IMG/VR virus record: IMGVR_UViG_3300038465_000091
Location: 124,001 to 188,000 of that record
DNA: 64,000 bases
Direction: 5' to 3' (one strand)
Part shown: positions 764 through 10,607 of the stretch, one piece after another
Layout of the letters: the number at the start of each line of letters is the position of its first letter
Position numbering within the stretch: position 1 is the first letter of the stretch
Position numbers and translations under genes: made by a program
The notes under the pieces: generated by a model
What the model saw: the letters and a program-made list of their open reading frames with translations, nothing else
What the model was told of the DNA's origin: nothing
The model's database searches: none

Positions 764-1009
764 TAGCTCCGGTGACCGTGGGCAGCAGCCGTTTCTGATT
801 CCGAAAGTATTCCCACGGGTGTATCTGACTTTGCCATGGGCAAAAGGGTTGCTGGTGCCCTCCGTGGTCGGTTCGCAAACACACCGTAAGCACCGCGATG
901 GGTCGAAAGCGAACTAGGCCCTCCTTGGTTTCAGGAATAGGCTGAGGCGTCGGCGGTGGTCAGGCGGTTGAGCCATGGTGACCGAGACGGAACTCCATGG
1001 CCGGAGCTA
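764..1009 (+). ncRNA. Putative structured non-coding RNA (~245 nt), class unknown
   Basis: Ends pair (TAGCTCCGG 764-772 / CCGGAGCTA 1001-1009). Internal stems: CCGTGGG/CCCACGG, GGTGC/GCACC, CCATGG/CCATGG. It starts just after a -10 box and has no credible ORF. Confidence 0.55.
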
Positions 1010-3052: not shown

Positions 3053-3080
3053 TTGCAAATTTCTCAACTACTGGTATTAT
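3053..3080 (+). promoter_or_regulatory. Sigma70-like promoter
   Basis: TTGCAA (3053-3058), 16-nt spacer, TATTAT (3075-3080); AGGAG RBS at 3087-3091. Confidence 0.6.
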
Positions 3081-3099
3081 GTCTTTAGGAGCTACTCAA

Positions 3100-3540
3100 A
3101 TGCGTAAGATCGATGAAGGCAACATCACGGGTCTCTAGGTTTCACAGCAGCAACCAGCGTACTTCTTCCTTTTCGTCCGTCAAGACATCTCCCTAGCACA
3201 GCAATTAGTCCAAAGCAACCACGCCACGTTTGAAATGGCGAAGCGTTTGCCGTCCGATTACGATCAAACCCCAAATCTCATCCTTGTCGGCGTGCCCGAT
3301 AAGTCAGCTTTATTCCGTGTTATCAACAAGTTAAATGACAATGCCATCGGCCATGAAGTGTTCTATGAGCCCGATGACAACCTCGGGTTGACCGCAGTCG
3401 CGACCTACCCGCTCACGCAGGAGCAGCGTCGTGCGCTTTCCAACTATCGGTTGTGGAAGTCCGACGTTGCCCCTGCACCACAAACCATCGTGCCGCAATT
3501 CAAAGAACAATTCAAGGAGGCATCAGCCTGTGAAATCTAA
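3100..3540 (+). CDS. Peptidyl-tRNA hydrolase (Pth2-like) with an in-frame amber (TAG) at codon 13
   Basis: RBS + ATG 3100: MRKIDEGNITGL-TAG(3136-3138)-VSQQQPAYFFLFVRQDISLAQQLVQSNHATFEMAKRL... in frame with track ORF 3235..3540. The FVRQD...Q..HA, LILVGVPD and TAVA segments match the PTH2 fold pattern. Confidence 0.75.
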
Positions 3541-4174
3541 AGAACTAATTCGGCTTTTGCAAGAGGAAGACCCGACTGGCGAAACAGAAGTCAGCGTCGG
3601 CAACCACGATATTTTCGAGCTTCGCACGGAGCCCGCATACTGGGACGGCAAGCTGCAACTTTTGATTCGTGATCCAGCGAAAGCTCCGTATTACGACATA
3701 GTGGGCGGCAAGTATTGCACGGCAGGCAGCAAGATCGTCATCAACGCCATGAGCATCAGCGATGTGCTGTGGCAGGACCCTGACGCCACTGTGGACTACT
3801 CGGAACTTGGGCAGTACGCCGACAAGTACCGCGAGGCCGATGAGAAGACACGGCGGGCATCCCGTGACGTGACGCTCAAGGTAGGGATGGACGCCTTCTA
3901 TCGTTGGGTAAAGTCGAAGGCGGAAGCGATTCGCCCGGGTGACACGGATTGCCGCAGCGGAGCGGATTACTTCTTCGAAAAGCATTTGCATGTGGACGAC
4001 CCATTGAAGGAATTGCCGAAACAGAAGCACGTAGATTCGACTGGCAAGGAATACGAATGTTGGCCGAGCGTTAACGACCGCCGTGAGTCAGGTTGGGATG
4101 ATCGCATCGAGGTCTACTGGCGTGGCGGCTGGGGTATCAAGATGAAAGACGGCTCCGCTGTCGAAGGGGAATAA
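3530..4174 (+). CDS. Hypothetical phage protein
   Basis: AGGAGG RBS at 3515-3520, GTG at 3530, in track ORF 3431..4174. Confidence 0.75.
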   Translation: MKSKELIRLLQEEDPTGETEVSVGNHDIFELRTEPAYWDGKLQLLIRDPAKAPYYDIVGGKYCTAGSKIVINAMSISDVLWQDPDATVDYSELGQYADKYREADEKTRRASRDVTLKVGMDAFYRWVKSKAEAIRPGDTDCRSGADYFFEKHLHVDDPLKELPKQKHVDSTGKEYECWPSVNDRRESGWDDRIEVYWRGGWGIKMKDGSAVEGE

Positions 4175-4180
4175 GTTTGC

Positions 4181-4270
4181 GGGCGATAAAAGGCGTCGAG
4201 ATCGTGCTTGCTGGATTGCTACGGCGAGCGTGATTGAAGTGCTGGGTGCTGAAAGGTGCCACGCCCACCA
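4181..4270 (+). ncRNA. CCA-ended tRNA-like RNA A (90 nt; acceptor-like stem, long hairpin, GAAA-capped stem)
   Basis: GGGCG/CGCCC-A-CCA ends; internal hairpin ATCGTGCTTGCT...GGCGAGCGTGAT; 3' half homologous to RNA B (5158-5207). Confidence 0.55.
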
Positions 4271-4271
4271 T

Positions 4272-4353
4272 ACGCGGGTAGCTCAGGTGGAGTTTCAGAG
4301 CGTCGGGACGCAAGTCTCGAAGGTCGGTGGTTCGAGTCCGCCCCCGCGTACCA
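4272..4353 (+). tRNA. tRNA-like RNA T1 whose anticodon loop is replaced by a GCAA tetraloop
   Basis: Acceptor ACGCGGG/CCCGCGT-A-CCA, D stem GCTC/GAGC, T arm GGTGG-TTCGAGT-CCGCC; anticodon arm TCGGGAC-GCAA-GTCTCGA. Confidence 0.8.
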
Positions 4354-4381
4354 AGTTTGCTCTTGAGAGCACTAGCGTTTG

Positions 4382-4389
4382 AGTATTAG
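4382..4389 (+). promoter_or_regulatory. AGTATTAG motif, candidate phage-specific promoter element
   Basis: Identical octamer at 4382, 5559, 9139 and 26745, each a short distance upstream of an ORF start. Confidence 0.4.
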
Positions 4390-4394
4390 ATTGT

Positions 4395-5033
4395 ATGACA
4401 AGAAATTTACTGATTACTGCACCGCCGTTCAAAGTGGAAGCATCAATGAAACAACTGGGTTCCAACTTACGTACAGCACGAATTCGACGCGAACTGACGA
4501 TAAAGCAGGTCGCTGAAAGTATAGGGACAGGACCACGCGCCGTCATGGATGCCGAAAAAGGAAAATCCACCACGGGATTAGTTGTTTACACCGCACTTCT
4601 TTGGAAGTATCTACTATTGGATAAAATGCACGAATTAGCCGATCCCCTTCGAGATGAAATCGGGCTTATCTGTGCCTCTAAGCGGGAACCAAAGCGTGCA
4701 ACACGTGCACGTGGAGTTGAAGAGGTGGGTGTCCCGAGCGTGTATTTTATAGGCGACACAAAGCGAGGCATTGTTAAAATTGGAAAATCCAATAAGCCCG
4801 TCAACCGTTTTGAAAGTCTTCAAGCGGCCAATGCGGGGCCGTTGCAACTATTGGCTGAGCTACCCTTTGAAACGGATCATGCCGCTTGGACCGCCGAAAG
4901 CGAACTGCACGCCAAATACAAATACCTCAATACCCACGGTGAGTGGTTTCGATTGGATTCGAGCCTGAACGAGGAAATTCTGGGTATTCGAGCGCGGAGT
5001 TTAAGGAGAGCAGATTTTGTAAGGCCCGAGTAG
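4395..5033 (+). CDS. XRE-type HTH fused to a T5orf172/MUG113-like GIY-YIG nuclease domain
   Basis: N-terminal LRTARIRRELTIKQVAESIG HTH; C-terminal VYFIG...VKIGKS..P..R...LQ......LQLL...E..LH......HGEWF. Its TAG stop lies inside T2. Confidence 0.75.
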   Translation: MTRNLLITAPPFKVEASMKQLGSNLRTARIRRELTIKQVAESIGTGPRAVMDAEKGKSTTGLVVYTALLWKYLLLDKMHELADPLRDEIGLICASKREPKRATRARGVEEVGVPSVYFIGDTKRGIVKIGKSNKPVNRFESLQAANAGPLQLLAELPFETDHAAWTAESELHAKYKYLNTHGEWFRLDSSLNEEILGIRARSLRRADFVRPE

Positions 5034-5114
5034 CTCAGTGTTAGAGCGCCTGTGCAACGCCCGCAAGGGCTACGCCACAGGAGGTCGGTGGTTCGATTCC
5101 ATCCTCGGGTACCA
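5024..5114 (+). tRNA. tRNA-like RNA T2 with a 21-nt hairpin-containing insert in place of the anticodon loop
   Basis: Acceptor GCCCGAG/CTCGGGT-A-CCA with normal D and T arms; stem CCTGTG/CACAGG encloses CAAC-GCCC-GCAA-GGGC-TACGC. Confidence 0.8.
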
Positions 5115-5157
5115 AGTTTGTATGGCGTAGAAGACGAATGTCTTTTATAAAATACAC

Positions 5158-5207
5158 GGGCGGTAGAGCAGCGCAAGCTGGGTGCCGCAAGGCATCACCG
5201 CCCACCA
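5158..5207 (+). ncRNA. 50-nt CCA-ended tRNA minihelix-like RNA B
   Basis: Perfect 7-bp GGGCGGT/ACCGCCC + ACCA; GGTGCC-GCAA-GGCATC stem at the T-arm position; small GC-GCAA-GC hairpin. Confidence 0.65.
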
Positions 5208-5212
5208 AGTTT

Positions 5213-5361
5213 GGGGAGTTCGCTAGGCGAAAACTTAGTAGGTGATATCGCCGAACGGTCAGTAACCGATAGGTGTGAGGCCAGCGGCGTAGTCGCCTTT
5301 AGCGAGGCTTGGCTGAAAAGCGACGAGACTGCGAGGGGTTCGAATCCTCTACTCCCCACCA
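5213..5361 (+). ncRNA. 149-nt tRNA-like RNA C with an expanded central domain
   Basis: Acceptor GGGGAGT/ACTCCCC-A-CCA; T arm AGGGG-TTCGAAT-CCTCT; internal stems CGGT/ACCG and GTCGC/GCGAC; no 7-nt anticodon loop found. Confidence 0.7.
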
Positions 5362-5384
5362 ATTTTTGTGGTAGAATACATTAT

Positions 5385-5460
5385 GCGCCCGTAGCTTAGC
5401 GGTTAAAAGCAGTCGTCTCTAAAACGATGATCGTCGGTTCGAATCCGACTGGGCGCACCA
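5385..5460 (+). tRNA. Amber suppressor tRNA (anticodon CTA)
   Basis: Canonical 76-nt cloverleaf: GCGCCCG/TGGGCGC-A-CCA; anticodon arm GTCGT-CT-CTA-AA-ACGAT (CTA at 5419-5421); T arm GTCGG-TTCGAAT-CCGAC. Confidence 0.85.
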
Positions 5461-5463
5461 AAT

Positions 5464-5543
5464 GGGCGAGTAGCTCAGTGAAAGAGCGGCTTCCGTTCTA
5501 GAACGGAAGAGGGTCGGTGGTTTAAGTCCATCCTCGCCCACCA
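5464..5543 (+). tRNA. tRNA-like RNA T3 with an extended palindromic anticodon arm
   Basis: Acceptor GGGCGAG/CTCGCCC-A-CCA; the anticodon arm is the perfect 20-nt palindrome CTTCCGTTCTAGAACGGAAG; T loop TTTAAGT. Confidence 0.75.
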
Positions 5544-5622: not shown

Positions 5623-6201
5623 ATGAAAATCCTAAGCTGTGCCCAAGGCTGTCTTAATGGCCTCGACAGACTTGCTCTCGCCTTTGGCTATCTAGCCGAA
5701 CCACCAACCAACAACTCAATTCAAAGCCAGACTGTTTATGAAGTTCATCGCCTCTCCTGTGATGAGTGTGATTCAATTGAACGTAACGTGGGGGGCAACT
5801 GTGAACGCTGCGAAGAAGGTAAAATCCTTGTTCGTCAAGCAGATAACTCGGCTAAGAAAGATCGAGTCAAATATCCGCACTCCGACGAACCTTCAGTGCG
5901 CGGCGAAGTCTGTCAATACGTACTTTTCAATCCGCAAGATTTCTACTACTATCTGTACAACTATGGCAAAGGCTTCTTAAATCATTTTGATCGGGAGACT
6001 CAACAAAAACTTGTTCGTCGGGGCGTCGTCGGATACTTGTGGGGAGCGACCGTGCTGCTGGATCGTGGTGTTCCTCGGGGGTACATCTGCCTCTCACCGG
6101 ACATCCGCGAGAAAGCCCTAACCTCGAAGCAGTCGATCCTGATTGACGGCGGCTTCATAGAACTGAAAAGCATGAAATATACGCTTGAAGATTATGCCTA
6201 A
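5623..6201 (+). CDS. Cys-rich N-terminus fused to a fragment paralogous to the major capsid protein
   Basis: LFNPQD...FDRETQQKLVRRGVVGYLWGATVLLDRGVPRGYICLSPD aligns by eye with FFNPRD...IDRETQRKLLKTGVMGYLWGATLLQSRKVGYGCIYILAD in 46489..47448. Confidence 0.8.
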   Translation: MKILSCAQGCLNGLDRLALAFGYLAEPPTNNSIQSQTVYEVHRLSCDECDSIERNVGGNCERCEEGKILVRQADNSAKKDRVKYPHSDEPSVRGEVCQYVLFNPQDFYYYLYNYGKGFLNHFDRETQQKLVRRGVVGYLWGATVLLDRGVPRGYICLSPDIREKALTSKQSILIDGGFIELKSMKYTLEDYA

Positions 6202-6363
6202 GAAGCCGACATTCGGACAGCAGATGGAAGCGATGCTCGTGCTGGGCTGCGTGGTCTGGCTCGTCATCGGGATCGCCAGTGACGTTTTGAATTTCATCAT
6301 GCGTCACTGGACGATTTTCTCGCCTCTTTCCATTCTCCTTGATTTGGTGGTATATTAAACGAG

Positions 6364-6621
6364 ATGGCAAAAATCAATAAGAAGACCAAGACCTGCGGTA
6401 GCACCACCTGCGTCGGCTGCCTGCCGCCGAAGAAGTTCGTATTCAAGATTGAGGGGAGCTTTGAGCTTCCAGCTTTCTGGACTGCGGACGCCGCCGAAGT
6501 GATACTGACAAAGGCTCTCGATCAGGGGTTGAACCTCATCGTCGAGGGGCGTTGCAGTAATAGCATCGAATACGCCGCTTACGTTTTCGAGGACAAAGAT
6601 GCCGACTCCAGCTTCCGTTGA
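6364..6621 (+). CDS. Hypothetical protein
   Basis: 85-aa ORF; ATG 7 nt after a TATATT box, possibly leaderless. Confidence 0.6.
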   Translation: MAKINKKTKTCGSTTCVGCLPPKKFVFKIEGSFELPAFWTADAAEVILTKALDQGLNLIVEGRCSNSIEYAAYVFEDKDADSSFR

Positions 6622-7902: not shown

Positions 7903-8040
7903 ATGGCTGAGACCTTGGAACAAGAGGATTACTCGACGTGGACTTCGTGCCAGATGTACGGGCACAATTACGTGACTGATGAAGATCAGCCGAACTATCA
8001 CTTCTGTACCGACTGTGACGAAGCTTACTTTGACGAGTGA
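7903..8040 (+). CDS. Small Zn-finger-like protein (45 aa) within the tRNA array
   Basis: GAGGAGG RBS; MAETLEQEDYSTWTSCQMYGHNY...HFCTDCDEAYFDE. Confidence 0.6.
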   Translation: MAETLEQEDYSTWTSCQMYGHNYVTDEDQPNYHFCTDCDEAYFDE

Positions 8041-10244: not shown

Positions 10245-10607
10245 ATGGGAACAACTTGTCCATTGAATGATCTCGGGTTACATTTTTGTCAATGTAAGGA
10301 TGAGCCAGTTCGGTCGATCAACTCGAAAGAAGAGTTTACCCGCGCACTGACTCGCCTTGTCCTCACGCTAGCCGCTAAACTCGATCTGACGCCAACCGAT
10401 CTATACGGTGTGGTTGTTCGACTTAGTGACATCGATTCCGAGATCGTCACGAAATTCACCGAAGCACATGCGGGGCAGACTTTTGGTACCGCCGTTGAAG
10501 CGGGGCAGCGTAGCATGGAATTTCGCCGCGAATACCTCACCGCCCTTCTGGAAAATGAATCAAATATCTCAAACGAGGAACAGAACAATGAACTCACTAC
10601 TGACTAA
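10245..10607 (+). CDS. Hypothetical protein
   Basis: GGTATAAT box and GAGGAG RBS upstream. Confidence 0.65.
   Translation: MGTTCPLNDLGLHFCQCKDEPVRSINSKEEFTRALTRLVLTLAAKLDLTPTDLYGVVVRLSDIDSEIVTKFTEAHAGQTFGTAVEAGQRSMEFRREYLTALLENESNISNEEQNNELTTD

What the first reader, a model, noticed from the sequence alone, without database searches (positions are those of the whole stretch)
4181..5207. Two homologous CCA-ended minihelix RNAs (90 nt and 50 nt) with a GNRA-capped 'T arm'
Seen in sequence: A (4181-4270) and B (5158-5207) both start GGGCG and end GCTGGGTGC(T/C)G(A/C)AAGG...CA(C)CGCCCACCA. B has a perfect 7-bp acceptor stem, ACCA and a GGTGCC-GCAA-GGCATC stem, but no D or anticodon arm. The differences between A and B in this stem preserve pairing through GU/GC swaps. 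Established knowledge: acceptor-T minihelices can be substrates for RNase P, the CCA-adding enzyme and some synthetases. Inference: a compact phage RNA class that standard tRNA finders would miss.
Basis: partly seen in the sequence, partly recalled or inferred. Interest (0 to 1): 0.72.

Follow-up and report, generated by a model that had tools for sequence, protein, structure and literature searches.

The report
CCA-ended minihelix RNAs in phage tRNA arrays
Two small genes in the tRNA cluster of an uncultivated giant peat phage encode stripped-down tRNA look-alikes that keep only the acceptor stem and CCA tail; they are conserved in related giant phages, no tRNA or RNA-family finder detects them, and their function is unknown.

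Summary
A (4181-4270) and B (5158-5207) are at the stated coordinates. A has the same plan, with the first hairpin expanded into a long arm.

B recurs in tRNA arrays of at least six other lineages of huge peat and soil phages. It is 84-98% identical there, while neighbouring tRNAs are about 62-83% identical and an adjacent protein 58-63%. Sequence changes fall on the N of GNRA or are compensatory: 5 pairs changed on both sides, 99.3% of cells paired. A has homologues in two further lineages. Covariance models of A and B find each other. ARAGORN, Rfam, 50,697 phage records and 185,579 species genomes give nothing.

Both sit in tRNA-like processing contexts. The same arrays hold hairpin-plus-CCA RNAs and full-size tRNA-likes whose anticodon loop is replaced by a tetraloop.

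Best reading: a clade-specific family of non-decoding, tRNA-derived RNAs matured like tRNAs and acting through the acceptor/CCA end. They may be mimics or decoys in tRNA-directed phage-host conflict. That function is inferred, not shown, and transcription is essentially untested.

The parts
4181..4270 (+). Element A: 90-nt CCA-ended RNA. 5-bp acceptor GGGCG/CGCCC, A-rich linker, long arm (4 + 14 bp) with the invariant loop GAUUGCUA, 6-bp GAAA-capped hairpin, ACCA.
   Evidence: Sequence; fold. Homologues at L097 6555-6643 (78/90 identical) and L054 8158-8251(-). R1 hit at 22.5 bits. No ARAGORN or Rfam hit.
5158..5207 (+). Element B: 50-nt CCA-ended three-way-junction minihelix. 7-bp acceptor, AGAG linker, 4-bp GCAA hairpin, 6-bp GCAA hairpin, ACCA.
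   Evidence: Eight distinct copies with covariation. 84-98% identity across lineages.
4272..4353 (+). tRNA-like with intact acceptor, D and T arms, whose anticodon stem-loop is replaced by a 7-bp GCAA-capped hairpin. It starts 1 nt after A's CCA, so the two form a dimeric precursor layout.
   Evidence: Rfam tRNA 42 bits only at the E-value threshold; ARAGORN misses it; fold. Alignment A9 shows the L096 orthologue is an ordinary tRNA-Lys(UUU).
5024..5114 (+). tRNA-like whose anticodon arm is extended by an internal loop and a GCCC-GCAA-GGGC cap. ARAGORN calls it 'tRNA-Arg(acg)' with an insert.
   Evidence: The L001 and L097 copies carry compensatory changes in the cap helix.
5213..5361 (+). 149-nt CCA-ended RNA with a 7-bp acceptor and a T arm around a ~110-nt insert. 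It follows B after a 5-nt AGUUU spacer (5208-5212).
   Evidence: Fold. 147/149 identical in L001. No Rfam family. Layout resembles T4 rnaC.
5385..5460 (+). Amber-suppressor-type tRNA (anticodon CUA).
   Evidence: ARAGORN and Rfam. One to three copies in every related array.
5464..5543 (+). tRNA-like with acceptor GGGCGAG (first 5 bp as in A and B) and an 8-bp palindromic 'anticodon' arm with a CUAG loop.
   Evidence: 77/80 identical in L097.
5208..5214 (+). Trailer AGUUUGG directly after B's CCA. The same A-R-UUU trailer follows most tRNA CCA ends of this genome, also occurs at 4354 and 5115, and lies between the upstream stop codon and A at 4174-4178.
   Evidence: trailers of all 37 tRNAs; for relatives. 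The reading as an RNase E-type site is from established knowledge, not tested.
5130..5148 (+). Conserved spacer hairpin GAAGAC-GAAU-GUCUU followed by a U run, upstream of B here and downstream of B in relatives.
   Evidence: Function unknown.
3079..3540 (+). PTH2-like (peptidyl-tRNA hydrolase 2 family) gene with a conserved in-frame TAG at 3136-3138.
   Evidence: Translation. The L054 orthologue has the TAG at the same place. Pfam PF01981 E 0.024 for the L054 copy, below the cut-off. Atlas score 0.95 with 227 shared features to viral PTH2 clusters.
3530..4174 (+). Conserved protein of unknown function whose stop codon lies 6 nt before A. It precedes the array in the window, L001, L002, L096, L097 and L098.
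   Evidence: No Pfam or PHROG family. AF2 model unusable. Absent from G003, which still has A, B and the hairpin.
4395..5033 (+). HTH + T5orf172/MUG113 (GIY-YIG-like, homing-endonuclease-like) ORF between the RNA genes.

Best explanation
A and B are two members of a clade-specific family of non-decoding, tRNA-derived small RNA genes in the tRNA arrays of huge contractile-tailed phages from peat and soil.

Inferred mechanism:
1. They are co-transcribed with the tRNAs.
2. They are cut out by the tRNA maturation machinery. RNase P cuts at G1, an endonuclease cuts in the A-R-UUU trailer or the neighbour's RNase P site, and exonucleases trim back to the genome-encoded NCCA.
3. They accumulate as stable 50-nt and 90-nt RNAs.

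Their only tRNA-like surface is an acceptor helix stacked on a GNRA-capped helix, ending in single-stranded ACCA-3'. They cannot decode because they have no anticodon loop.

They most likely act by presenting this acceptor/CCA end to a protein that normally reads tRNA 3' ends. That would make them mimics (competitor, decoy or dedicated substrate) in the conflict over tRNA integrity between phage and host. Of these roles, a decoy or competitor for enzymes directed at the acceptor stem or CCA tail is my first choice.

Shown: existence, conservation, structure, array context. Inferred: transcription, processing, stability, binding partner, biological role.
For: Real, constrained RNA structure:
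- Eight distinct B copies are 99.3% paired, with 5 pairs changed on both sides. Only 0-1 of 500 shuffles reach the observed values, and slid controls collapse.
- Loop variation is confined to the N of GNRA: GCAA, GUAA, GGAA, GAAA.
- L002 has a second copy in which both hairpin stems have different sequences but the same pairing, GAAA loops and an identical acceptor.

Stronger constraint than its surroundings:
- B is 84-98% identical across lineages. Orthologous tRNAs are about 62-83% identical, and the adjacent protein is 58-63% identical in amino acids.

A belongs with B:
- The models hit each other reciprocally.
- A's architecture and its GAUUGCUA loop are conserved in L097 and L054.

tRNA-type processing context:
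- Same strand and spacing as the tRNAs. Spacers to the neighbour's CCA are 1-3 nt in L001, L002, L054, L096, L097 and L098, and 1 nt between A and the next tRNA-like.
- NCCA is encoded, as in 35 of 37 tRNAs of the genome, with the same A-R-UUU trailer.

Selection for the acceptor end without decoding:
- The same arrays hold simple hairpin + ACCA RNAs: L001 5121-5155, L054 8117-8148, and one seen in L096.
- They also hold full-size tRNA-likes whose anticodon loop is replaced by a tetraloop. One is a clear derivative of tRNA-Lys(UUU).

Investment in tRNA ends:
- Both complete relatives encode a CCA-adding-enzyme family protein.
- A PTH2-like gene and a permuted tmRNA lie next to the arrays.

Published plausibility:
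- Cas12a3 cuts tRNA CCA tails and accepts minimal hairpin + CCA substrates. Its authors state that phage countermeasures are unknown (PMC12851939).
- Phage tRNAs are proposed to evolve anticodon-loop changes that evade host nucleases (PMC10264068).
Against: - There is no direct evidence of transcription, of 5' or 3' ends, or of abundance. The only RNA-library signal is one 191-nt contig with an exact B copy in unrelated flanks, and DNA carry-over cannot be excluded.
- A decoy would have to compete with a very large cellular tRNA pool.
- The invariant acceptor sequence of B fits a sequence-specific reader, such as a synthetase or another dedicated enzyme, better than a generic CCA-tail mimic.
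- The held 71% of the window's own genome has no CCA-adding enzyme.
- No partner protein was identified. The syntenic 209-aa protein is absent from G003, which has A and B.
- The family was found in only about seven related lineages, so part of the 'conservation' could be shared ancestry. The much faster divergence of the flanking genes argues against that.
Confidence: 0.5

Rival explanations
1. Dedicated substrates rather than decoys. The minihelices are charged, or otherwise modified at A76, by a synthetase or another acceptor-specific enzyme. They would then serve as amino-acid carriers or cofactors for a non-ribosomal reaction, or as ligands for the phage PTH2-like hydrolase or CCA-adding enzyme.
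For: - The acceptor helix and A73 of B are invariant in 8 of 8 distinct copies, including the copy whose internal hairpins are entirely different. An acceptor-free pattern finds only copies with that acceptor.
- G1-C72, G2-C71, G3-C70, C4-G69, G5-C68 and A73 are shared by A, B and the tRNA-like at 5464-5543.
- PTH2-like and CCA-adding genes occur in the clade.
- Established knowledge: several synthetases charge acceptor minihelices, and tRNA-dependent transferases read mainly the acceptor arm.
Against: - There is no G3:U70, no G-1 and no other known anticodon-independent identity mark.
- No synthetase sits next to the arrays. Only weak class-II core fragments were found in one relative.
- Nothing was tested biochemically.
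Confidence: 0.2
2. Cis-acting processing or stability modules. The elements would exist to give RNase P and RNase E entry points, or to cap 3' ends, within a long polycistronic transcript that mixes mRNAs and tRNAs. This is tRNA-punctuation style, like MALAT1-mascRNA. The released small RNAs would have no function of their own.
For: - A (or a hairpin minihelix) sits 6-10 nt after the stop codon of the upstream gene in the window, L001, L096 and L097.
- Homing-endonuclease ORFs are interleaved with the RNA genes.
- No terminator-like site lies between the upstream gene and A.
Against: - B lies between two other RNA genes, not next to an mRNA, in most lineages.
- A structural punctuation mark would need only its shape. 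B's sequence is more conserved than real tRNAs, including an invariant acceptor.
- L098 and L002 lack any element at the post-gene position.
Confidence: 0.15
3. Decaying tRNA pseudogenes or array debris with no function.
For: - The arrays are mosaic and are invaded by homing-endonuclease-like genes.
- Some relatives lack A. Some tRNA-likes lack an encoded CCA, for example the L097 copy of the 4272-4353 element.
Against: - Compensatory changes are present, GNRA loops are maintained, and pairing is 99.3%.
- B is the most conserved unit of the array.
- Independent scaffolds reach the same end state: the anticodon loop is capped while the acceptor and CCA are kept.
Confidence: 0.05
4. DNA-level or transcription-level signals: homing-endonuclease or recombination target sites, or terminators or attenuators, rather than RNA genes.
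For: - Homing-endonuclease-like ORFs are nearby.
- The sequences are G+C-rich inverted repeats.
Against: - Substitutions preserve RNA pairing through G-U intermediates on one strand only.
- No U tract follows the stems, and the terminator scan does not flag A or B.
- The orientation is always that of the tRNAs, and NCCA is always on the tRNA strand.
Confidence: 0.05

Closest known systems
Phage T4 small stable RNAs, species 1 and 2 (rnaC, rnaD), in the T4 tRNA cluster
   Same: - Non-tRNA small RNA genes embedded in a phage tRNA cluster, on the tRNA strand, next to a GIY-YIG homing endonuclease (T4 annotation).
- rnaC has a T-arm-like hairpin near its 3' end, like the window's 149-nt RNA at 5213-5361.
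- Function unknown.
   Different: - T4 rnaC and rnaD are 119-139 nt, have no encoded CCA in the annotated gene, and have no GNRA-capped three-way junction.
- A and B have no T loop.
- A and B gave no blastn hit covering more than 66% of the query in 50,697 phage records, which include T4.
Acceptor-TΨC minihelices and microhelices (laboratory tRNA truncations)
   Same: - About 12-13 bp of coaxial helix ending in NCCA-3'. In B it is 7 + 6 bp.
- By established knowledge, such molecules are recognised by RNase P, CCA-adding enzyme, EF-Tu and some synthetases.
- A hairpin + CCA is also a substrate of Cas12a3 (PMC12851939).
   Different: - Those are engineered fragments capped by a T loop.
- A and B are natural genes, capped by GNRA, and carry an extra arm and a purine linker, which makes a three-way junction.
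Non-decoding tRNA-like RNAs released by RNase P (mascRNA type) and the tRNA-like domains of tmRNA and YrlA
   Same: tRNA mimicry without decoding. The proposed release by tRNA processing enzymes is also shared.
   Different: - mascRNA, tmRNA and YrlA keep a T arm or elbow.
- tmRNA has G3:U70 and a tag ORF.
- YrlA works with Rsr. No TROVE gene is present in the clade, and Rfam finds none of these families at A or B.
Phage tRNAs with anticodon-loop changes proposed to evade host anticodon nucleases (PMC10264068)
   Same: - Phage tRNA arrays shaped by tRNA-targeting defence.
- Here tRNA-Lys(UUU) copies carry G33 or A33, and one paralogue has lost the loop altogether.
   Different: Those tRNAs still decode. 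A, B and the tetraloop-capped tRNA-likes cannot.
Armless mitochondrial tRNAs (D-arm-less and/or T-arm-less, down to ~42 nt)
   Same: Extreme size reduction with an acceptor stem and short connector regions.
   Different: Mitochondrial minimal tRNAs keep a 7-nt anticodon loop and decode. B's arms end in tetraloops, and A's long arm is about 18 bp with an 8-nt loop.

Membership tests
tRNA (Rfam RF00005 / ARAGORN) | Cloverleaf with D arm, 7-nt anticodon loop and T loop; detected by tRNA models | tested here: not met
   No hit at A or B with ARAGORN or Rfam, even at E <= 5. The folds show no D arm, no T loop and no 7-nt loop.
tRNA (Rfam RF00005 / ARAGORN) | Acceptor helix followed by discriminator + CCA | tested here: met
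   B: 7 bp + ACCA. A: 5 bp + ACCA.
tmRNA (one-piece or permuted) | tRNA-like domain with a T arm and G3:U70, plus a tag reading frame | tested here: not met
   Position 3-70 is G-C, there is no T arm, and the size is 50 or 90 nt. Rfam and ARAGORN place the phage's permuted tmRNA elsewhere (genome 123104-123446; relatives).
T4-type small stable RNAs (rnaC / rnaD) | Non-tRNA RNA gene inside a phage tRNA cluster, co-oriented with the tRNAs | tested here: met
T4-type small stable RNAs (rnaC / rnaD) | Sequence or structural homology to rnaC or rnaD | tested here: not met
   No blastn hit of A or B covering more than 66% of the query in the phage collection, which includes T4. The folds differ.
Acceptor-TΨC minihelix (functional class) | ~12-bp coaxial helix ending in NCCA-3' | tested here: met
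   B: acceptor 7 bp directly abutting the 6-bp hairpin. A: 5 bp + 6 bp with a 1-nt bulge.
Acceptor-TΨC minihelix (functional class) | Substrate for RNase P, CCA-adding enzyme, synthetase or EF-Tu | not testable with these tools
Y RNA-like (YrlA) / Rsr system | Rsr (TROVE) gene present and a YrlA model match | tested here: not met
   No PF05731 in the own genome or in three relatives. YrlA gives only weak sub-threshold hits, and these lie on ordinary tRNAs.
Intrinsic terminator | G+C-rich hairpin followed by a U tract | tested here: not met
   Not flagged at A or B. The 3' flank of B is ACCAAGUUUGGGG.
Expressed small RNA gene (any) | Discrete transcript with defined ends | tested here: inconclusive
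   One RNA-library contig holds an exact B copy in different flanks. No RNA contigs cover A. These are contig-level data only.

The most novel reading that the evidence does not exclude
A, B, the hairpin + CCA RNAs and the tetraloop-capped tRNA-likes are together a phage anti-defence RNA arsenal. They would be uncleavable or sacrificial mimics of the tRNA acceptor stem and CCA tail, and of the tRNA-Lys body. They would titrate or jam host immune effectors that attack tRNA ends or bodies, such as CCA-tail nucleases of the Cas12a3 type, acceptor-stem RNases, CCA-modifying toxins and tRNA-Lys anticodon nucleases. They would work alongside the clade's own CCA-adding enzyme. This would be an RNA-decoy counter-defence analogous to RNA anti-CRISPRs, and an answer to the stated open question of how phages resist CCA-tail cleavage.
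Probability: 0.2. Interest if true: 0.9.

Novelty: new variant of a known kind. Interest (0 to 1): 0.72.

Why it matters
Phage tRNA clusters have been known for about 50 years to contain 'extra' stable RNAs of unknown function, such as T4 species 1 and 2.

Here an entire graded series is seen in one clade:
- tRNA-Lys with altered position 33;
- tRNA bodies with the anticodon loop capped by a tetraloop;
- a three-way-junction minihelix (A and B);
- a bare hairpin + CCA.

The smallest members are the most strongly conserved. That pattern says selection is acting on the acceptor/CCA end itself, outside decoding.

It comes at a time when bacterial immune effectors that attack exactly this end have just been described, with no known phage countermeasure.

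Even if the decoy idea is wrong, the family gives three things:
- a natural, genetically encoded minimal substrate class for tRNA-end enzymes;
- a concrete target for covariance-model annotation of phage genomes;
- a warning that tRNA finders both miss such genes and mislabel their anticodon-less neighbours (for example 'tRNA-Arg' at 5024 and 'tRNA-???' at 5464).

Tried and rejected
1. Chance or repeat artefact: rejected.
2. Known RNA family: Rfam gives nothing at A or B in the window or at their homologues in the relatives.
3. Archaeal-type bulge-helix-bulge intron in the extended anticodon arm at 5024-5114: the two 3-4-nt loops face each other rather than being staggered, so this is not a BHB motif (by inspection).
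4. A's loop as an antisense or kissing site: its 8-mer complement occurs 4 times in the genome against about 6.8 expected, so there is no enrichment.
5. A's loop as an anticodon loop: it has 8 nt on an arm of about 18 bp, which is incompatible with decoding geometry.
6. Upstream 209-aa protein as partner:
   - no Pfam, PHROG or Atlas lead;
   - AF2 model at pLDDT 39, unusable;
   - absent from G003, which has A and B;
   - Complex prediction was not folded and gives no evidence.
7. PTH2 annotation of 3079-3540: kept only as a moderate call. The PDB sequence search was uninformative, and PF01981 was not detected by the genome scan.
8. RtcB and TROVE: absent.
9. Global TAG recoding: no signal.
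10. Cellular genomes and cultured phages:
   - 0 hits in 185,579 species genomes;
   - no hit covering more than 66% of either query in 50,697 phage records;
   - Sinorhizobium phage Phosso (469 kb) has neither B nor the syntenic protein.
11. Most hits of the loose acceptor pattern (67 of 72 viral loci and most metagenome loci) are chance matches in coding DNA with no tRNAs nearby.
12. Sigma-70 promoter for B in the conserved spacer hairpin: the spacing does not fit, and the scan does not flag it.
Full report
**Context.** The window is bases 124001-188000 of a single 223,506-bp virus record with 53% G+C, estimated about 71% complete. It encodes a tail-sheath protein and a helicase. ARAGORN finds 37 tRNAs in four clusters plus a permuted tmRNA. 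Public runs that hold the stretch are peat, permafrost and soil metagenomes. Nothing close exists among 50,697 deposited phage genomes.

**The observation.**
- B folds, with 87% of the ensemble, into a 7-bp acceptor helix GGGCGGU/ACCGCCC, a 4-nt purine linker, CAGC-GCAA-GCUG, GGUGCC-GCAA-GGCAUC and a single-stranded ACCA. Its z-score is -4.4.
- A has a 5-bp acceptor GGGCG/CGCCC, an A-rich linker, a 4 + 14-bp arm with an 8-nt loop, GGUGCU-GAAA-GGUGCC and ACCA.
- The shared 3' hairpin differs between A and B at four pairs, each by a one-sided change through G-U.
- The shared 16-mer occurs nowhere else in the genome.
- Neither ARAGORN nor Rfam reports anything at A or B, even at E <= 5.

**Homologues of B.**
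- A degenerate pattern over the shared 3' module found B-type elements in three viral contigs.
- An acceptor-anchored pattern added L054 and L034. The other 67 loci from that scan were chance matches in coding DNA without tRNAs nearby.
- A metagenome scan followed by a covariance-model search added L096, L097 and L098.
- The distinct lineages are therefore: the window (with near-identical L003 and L095), L001 (103-kb contig), L002 (463 kb, complete), L054 (456 kb, complete; L034 carries the same elements), L096, L097 and L098.
- In every case the element lies on the tRNA strand inside a tRNA array.
- L002 carries a second copy with a different sequence in both hairpin stems (GUGG-GAAA-CCAC and GGGGAU-GAAA-GUCUUC) but the same acceptor.
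- L096 has CGGC/GCCG where the others have CAGC/GCUG.

**Covariation and specificity of B.**
- On the model-based alignment of the eight distinct copies, 99.3% of cells pair.
- Five pairs show changes on both sides.
- Only 0-1 of 500 shuffles reach the observed values, and sliding the 3' partners collapses pairing to 32-70%.
- Loop variation is at the N of GNRA (GCAA, GUAA, GGAA, GAAA). L054 instead has a hexaloop on the second hairpin.
- The acceptor helix and A73 never vary. An acceptor-free pattern recovered only copies with that same acceptor.
- A geometry-only pattern (GGG, two GNRA loops at fixed spacing, CCCACCA) hit only this family in 2.9 million viral contigs.
- No copy was found in one genome each of 185,579 prokaryotic species.

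**Degree of constraint.** Relative to the window, B is 49/50, 47/50, 42/50, 49/50, 45/50 and 46/50 identical in L001, L002, L054, L097, L096 and L098. The flanking tRNA and tRNA-like units are mostly 62-83% identical. The protein encoded just upstream is 58-63% identical and the PTH2-like protein 74-85%. B is thus the most conserved unit of the array.

**A and its relation to B.**
- A has homologues in L097 (78/90 identical) and L054.
- The L054 copy has a different acceptor (GCGGACG/CGUCUGC, then UCCA), covarying stems and the same GAUUGCUA loop.
- The 3' hairpin is capped by GAAA in all three copies.
- The B model scores A as the best non-B hit in the genome (22.5 bits, E 0.003).
- The A model scores L054's A at 31.7 bits and every B copy at 25-28 bits.
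- A is therefore a B-type three-way junction whose first hairpin has grown into a long arm.
- In L001, L096 and L054 the position just after the upstream gene is occupied by a 32-35-nt simple hairpin ending GCCCACCA. Its apical part resembles A's 3' hairpin. L054 has both this hairpin and A.

**Processing context.**
- Of the 37 tRNAs in the genome, 35 have an encoded CCA, and most are followed by A-R/A-UUU.
- B is followed by AGUUUG. The same motif lies between the upstream stop codon and A, and after the tRNA-likes ending at 4353 and 5114.
- A's CCA is 1 nt from the next tRNA-like.
- In five relatives B starts 1 nt after the preceding CCA, always preceded by AC.
- This is the layout of dimeric tRNA precursors. 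The A-R-UUU motif fits the RNase E preference known from enterobacteria. That is established knowledge, not something tested here.
- No terminator-like site separates the upstream gene from A.

**What else is in the arrays.**
- Several full-size tRNA-likes keep acceptor, D and T arms but have no anticodon loop:
  - 4272-4353 has a 7-bp arm with a GCAA loop.
  - 5024-5114 has an extended arm capped by GCAA, with compensatory changes in L001 and L097.
  - 5464-5543 has an 8-bp palindromic arm.
- The L096 orthologue of 4272-4353 is an ordinary tRNA-Lys(UUU) with the same acceptor, D and T arms. The anticodon stem-loop was therefore replaced.
- Other tRNA-Lys(UUU) copies carry G33 or A33.
- There are also two families of ~150-nt RNAs with a T arm. 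One is at 5213-5361 and ends in ACCA. The other occurs only in relatives, ending in ACCA in L001 and L002 but in ACCG in L096 and L098. Longer hairpin + CCA RNAs occur as well.
- Other clusters of the own genome contain further candidates.
- The layout recalls the T4 tRNA cluster with rnaC, rnaD and segB.

**Genes that bear on tRNA ends.**
- Both complete relatives encode a PolyA_pol/CCA-adding family protein. The held part of the own genome does not.
- A gene at 3079-3540, with a conserved in-frame TAG, is PTH2-like by a weak Pfam hit on its L054 orthologue and by Atlas neighbours.
- RtcB and TROVE are absent.
- The syntenic 209-aa protein has no recognisable family, gave an unusable model, and is missing from G003, which has A and B.
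- Complex prediction did not fold the protein-RNA pair and gives no evidence either way.

**Expression.** Only contig-level RNA data were available. One peat metatranscriptome run has a 191-nt contig (depth 8.5) with an exact copy of B. Its flanks are unlike any array seen here and are mutually complementary. No RNA contig covers A. This is weak evidence and remains unexplained.

**Interpretation.**
- *What the data establish.* There is a conserved, structured, clade-specific RNA gene family whose common denominator is an acceptor helix plus NCCA. Decoding capacity has been removed, and the genes are embedded in tRNA-type processing contexts.
- *What I infer.* Maturation is by the tRNA pathway, and action is through the acceptor/CCA end as a mimic.
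- *Choosing among roles.* I favour a competitor or decoy for enzymes that attack or read tRNA ends. Three points support this. The clade shows other signs of an arms race over tRNA integrity: altered tRNA-Lys loops, tetraloop-capped bodies and its own CCA-adding enzyme. Minimal hairpin + CCA molecules are recognised by a recently described CCA-tail nuclease (PMC12851939). Anticodon-loop evasion by phage tRNAs has been proposed (PMC10264068).
- *Counter-argument.* The invariant acceptor sequence argues for a sequence-specific reader and keeps a dedicated-substrate or aminoacyl-carrier role alive.
- *Less likely.* Punctuation-only, pseudogene and DNA-site explanations fit the conservation pattern poorly.

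**Novelty.** No described RNA family, deposited phage genome or paper found here covers these elements. In kind they extend the old, unexplained class of non-tRNA stable RNAs in phage tRNA clusters, and natural tRNA mimics more generally. I therefore rate them a new variant of a known kind.

Noticed in passing
window 4272-4353, 5024-5114, 5464-5543; L096 501-581(-): Full-size tRNA-like genes whose anticodon loop is replaced by a tetraloop-capped or palindromic hairpin. The first is a derivative of tRNA-Lys(UUU), as the L096 orthologue shows. ARAGORN labels two of them tRNA-Arg(acg) and tRNA-???(ctag), which is misleading.
   Followed up: partly
L001 5453-5527; L054 ~7960-8038(-): tRNA-Lys(UUU) copies with G33 or A33 instead of the universal U33. 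This is the kind of anticodon-loop change proposed to evade anticodon nucleases.
   Followed up: no
window 3079-3540 (TAG at 3136-3138); L054 8259-8720(-): PTH2-like peptidyl-tRNA hydrolase gene with an in-frame TAG conserved at the same position in a distant relative. It lies about 2 kb upstream of an amber-suppressor tRNA(CUA). Genome-wide ORF statistics show no global TAG recoding, so this may be a gene-specific programmed read-through.
   Followed up: partly
window 5213-5361; L001 5676-5824: 149-nt RNA with a 7-bp acceptor, a T arm, ACCA and a ~110-nt insert. It is 147/149 identical in L001 and has no Rfam family. Its layout resembles T4 rnaC.
   Followed up: partly
L001 ~5293-5439; L002 ~10388-10537(-); also L096 and L098: A second family of ~150-nt T-arm RNAs with a conserved core GGGAAACAUCGCGAUGAGUACCGCGU. 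It ends ...CCACCA in L001 and L002 but ...CCACCG in L096 and L098. It was not found in the window.
   Followed up: no
L001 5121-5155(+), 5834-5898(+); L054 8117-8148(-), 7745-7790(-); L002 9848-9925(-); L098 ~800-900(-): Further CCA-ended non-tRNA elements: simple GNRA-capped hairpins + ACCA, an 11-bp-stem RNA + GCCA, a B-like element with acceptor GGGGCAG, and a 78-nt tRNA-like with an aberrant T arm.
   Followed up: partly
own genome 60929-60996(-), 18382-18511(-), 60386-60642(-), 61735-62234(-): Other tRNA clusters of the same genome contain more candidates. These include a ~58-nt GGGGGU...GCCUCC-ACCA element, a ~115-nt CCA-ended RNA, a tRNA with a UUCG-capped insert in the anticodon arm, and a 500-nt gap that looks highly structured.
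   Followed up: no
window 5130-5148; L002, L054 and L098 just downstream of B: Conserved spacer hairpin AAGAC-GAAU-GUCUU followed by a U run. It changes sides relative to B between lineages. It could be a weak terminator, a processing site or a promoter-associated element.
   Followed up: no
window 5158-5207 versus run X25: A peat metatranscriptome contig (191 nt, depth 8.5) carries an exact B copy. Its flanks are unrelated to any array seen here and are reverse complements of each other over 13 nt.
   Followed up: partly
own genome 123104-123446; L054 12771-13053(-); L097 686-952(+): A permuted (two-piece) tmRNA gene is conserved a few kb upstream of the arrays.
   Followed up: no
G002 461074-461502; G003 217352-217804: Both complete 455-463-kb relatives encode a CCA-adding-enzyme family protein (ORFs of 444-453 aa).
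   Followed up: partly
window 4395-5033; L001 ~5921-6426; own genome 16340-16776(-), 62310-62699(-), 133140-133474(+): Homing-endonuclease-like ORFs (HTH + T5orf172 here, and ORFs that look HNH-like by eye elsewhere) are interleaved with the RNA genes. The N-terminal DNA of 4395-5033 matches intergenic tRNA-cluster DNA of PAK_P1-like Pseudomonas phages at about 78%.
   Followed up: no
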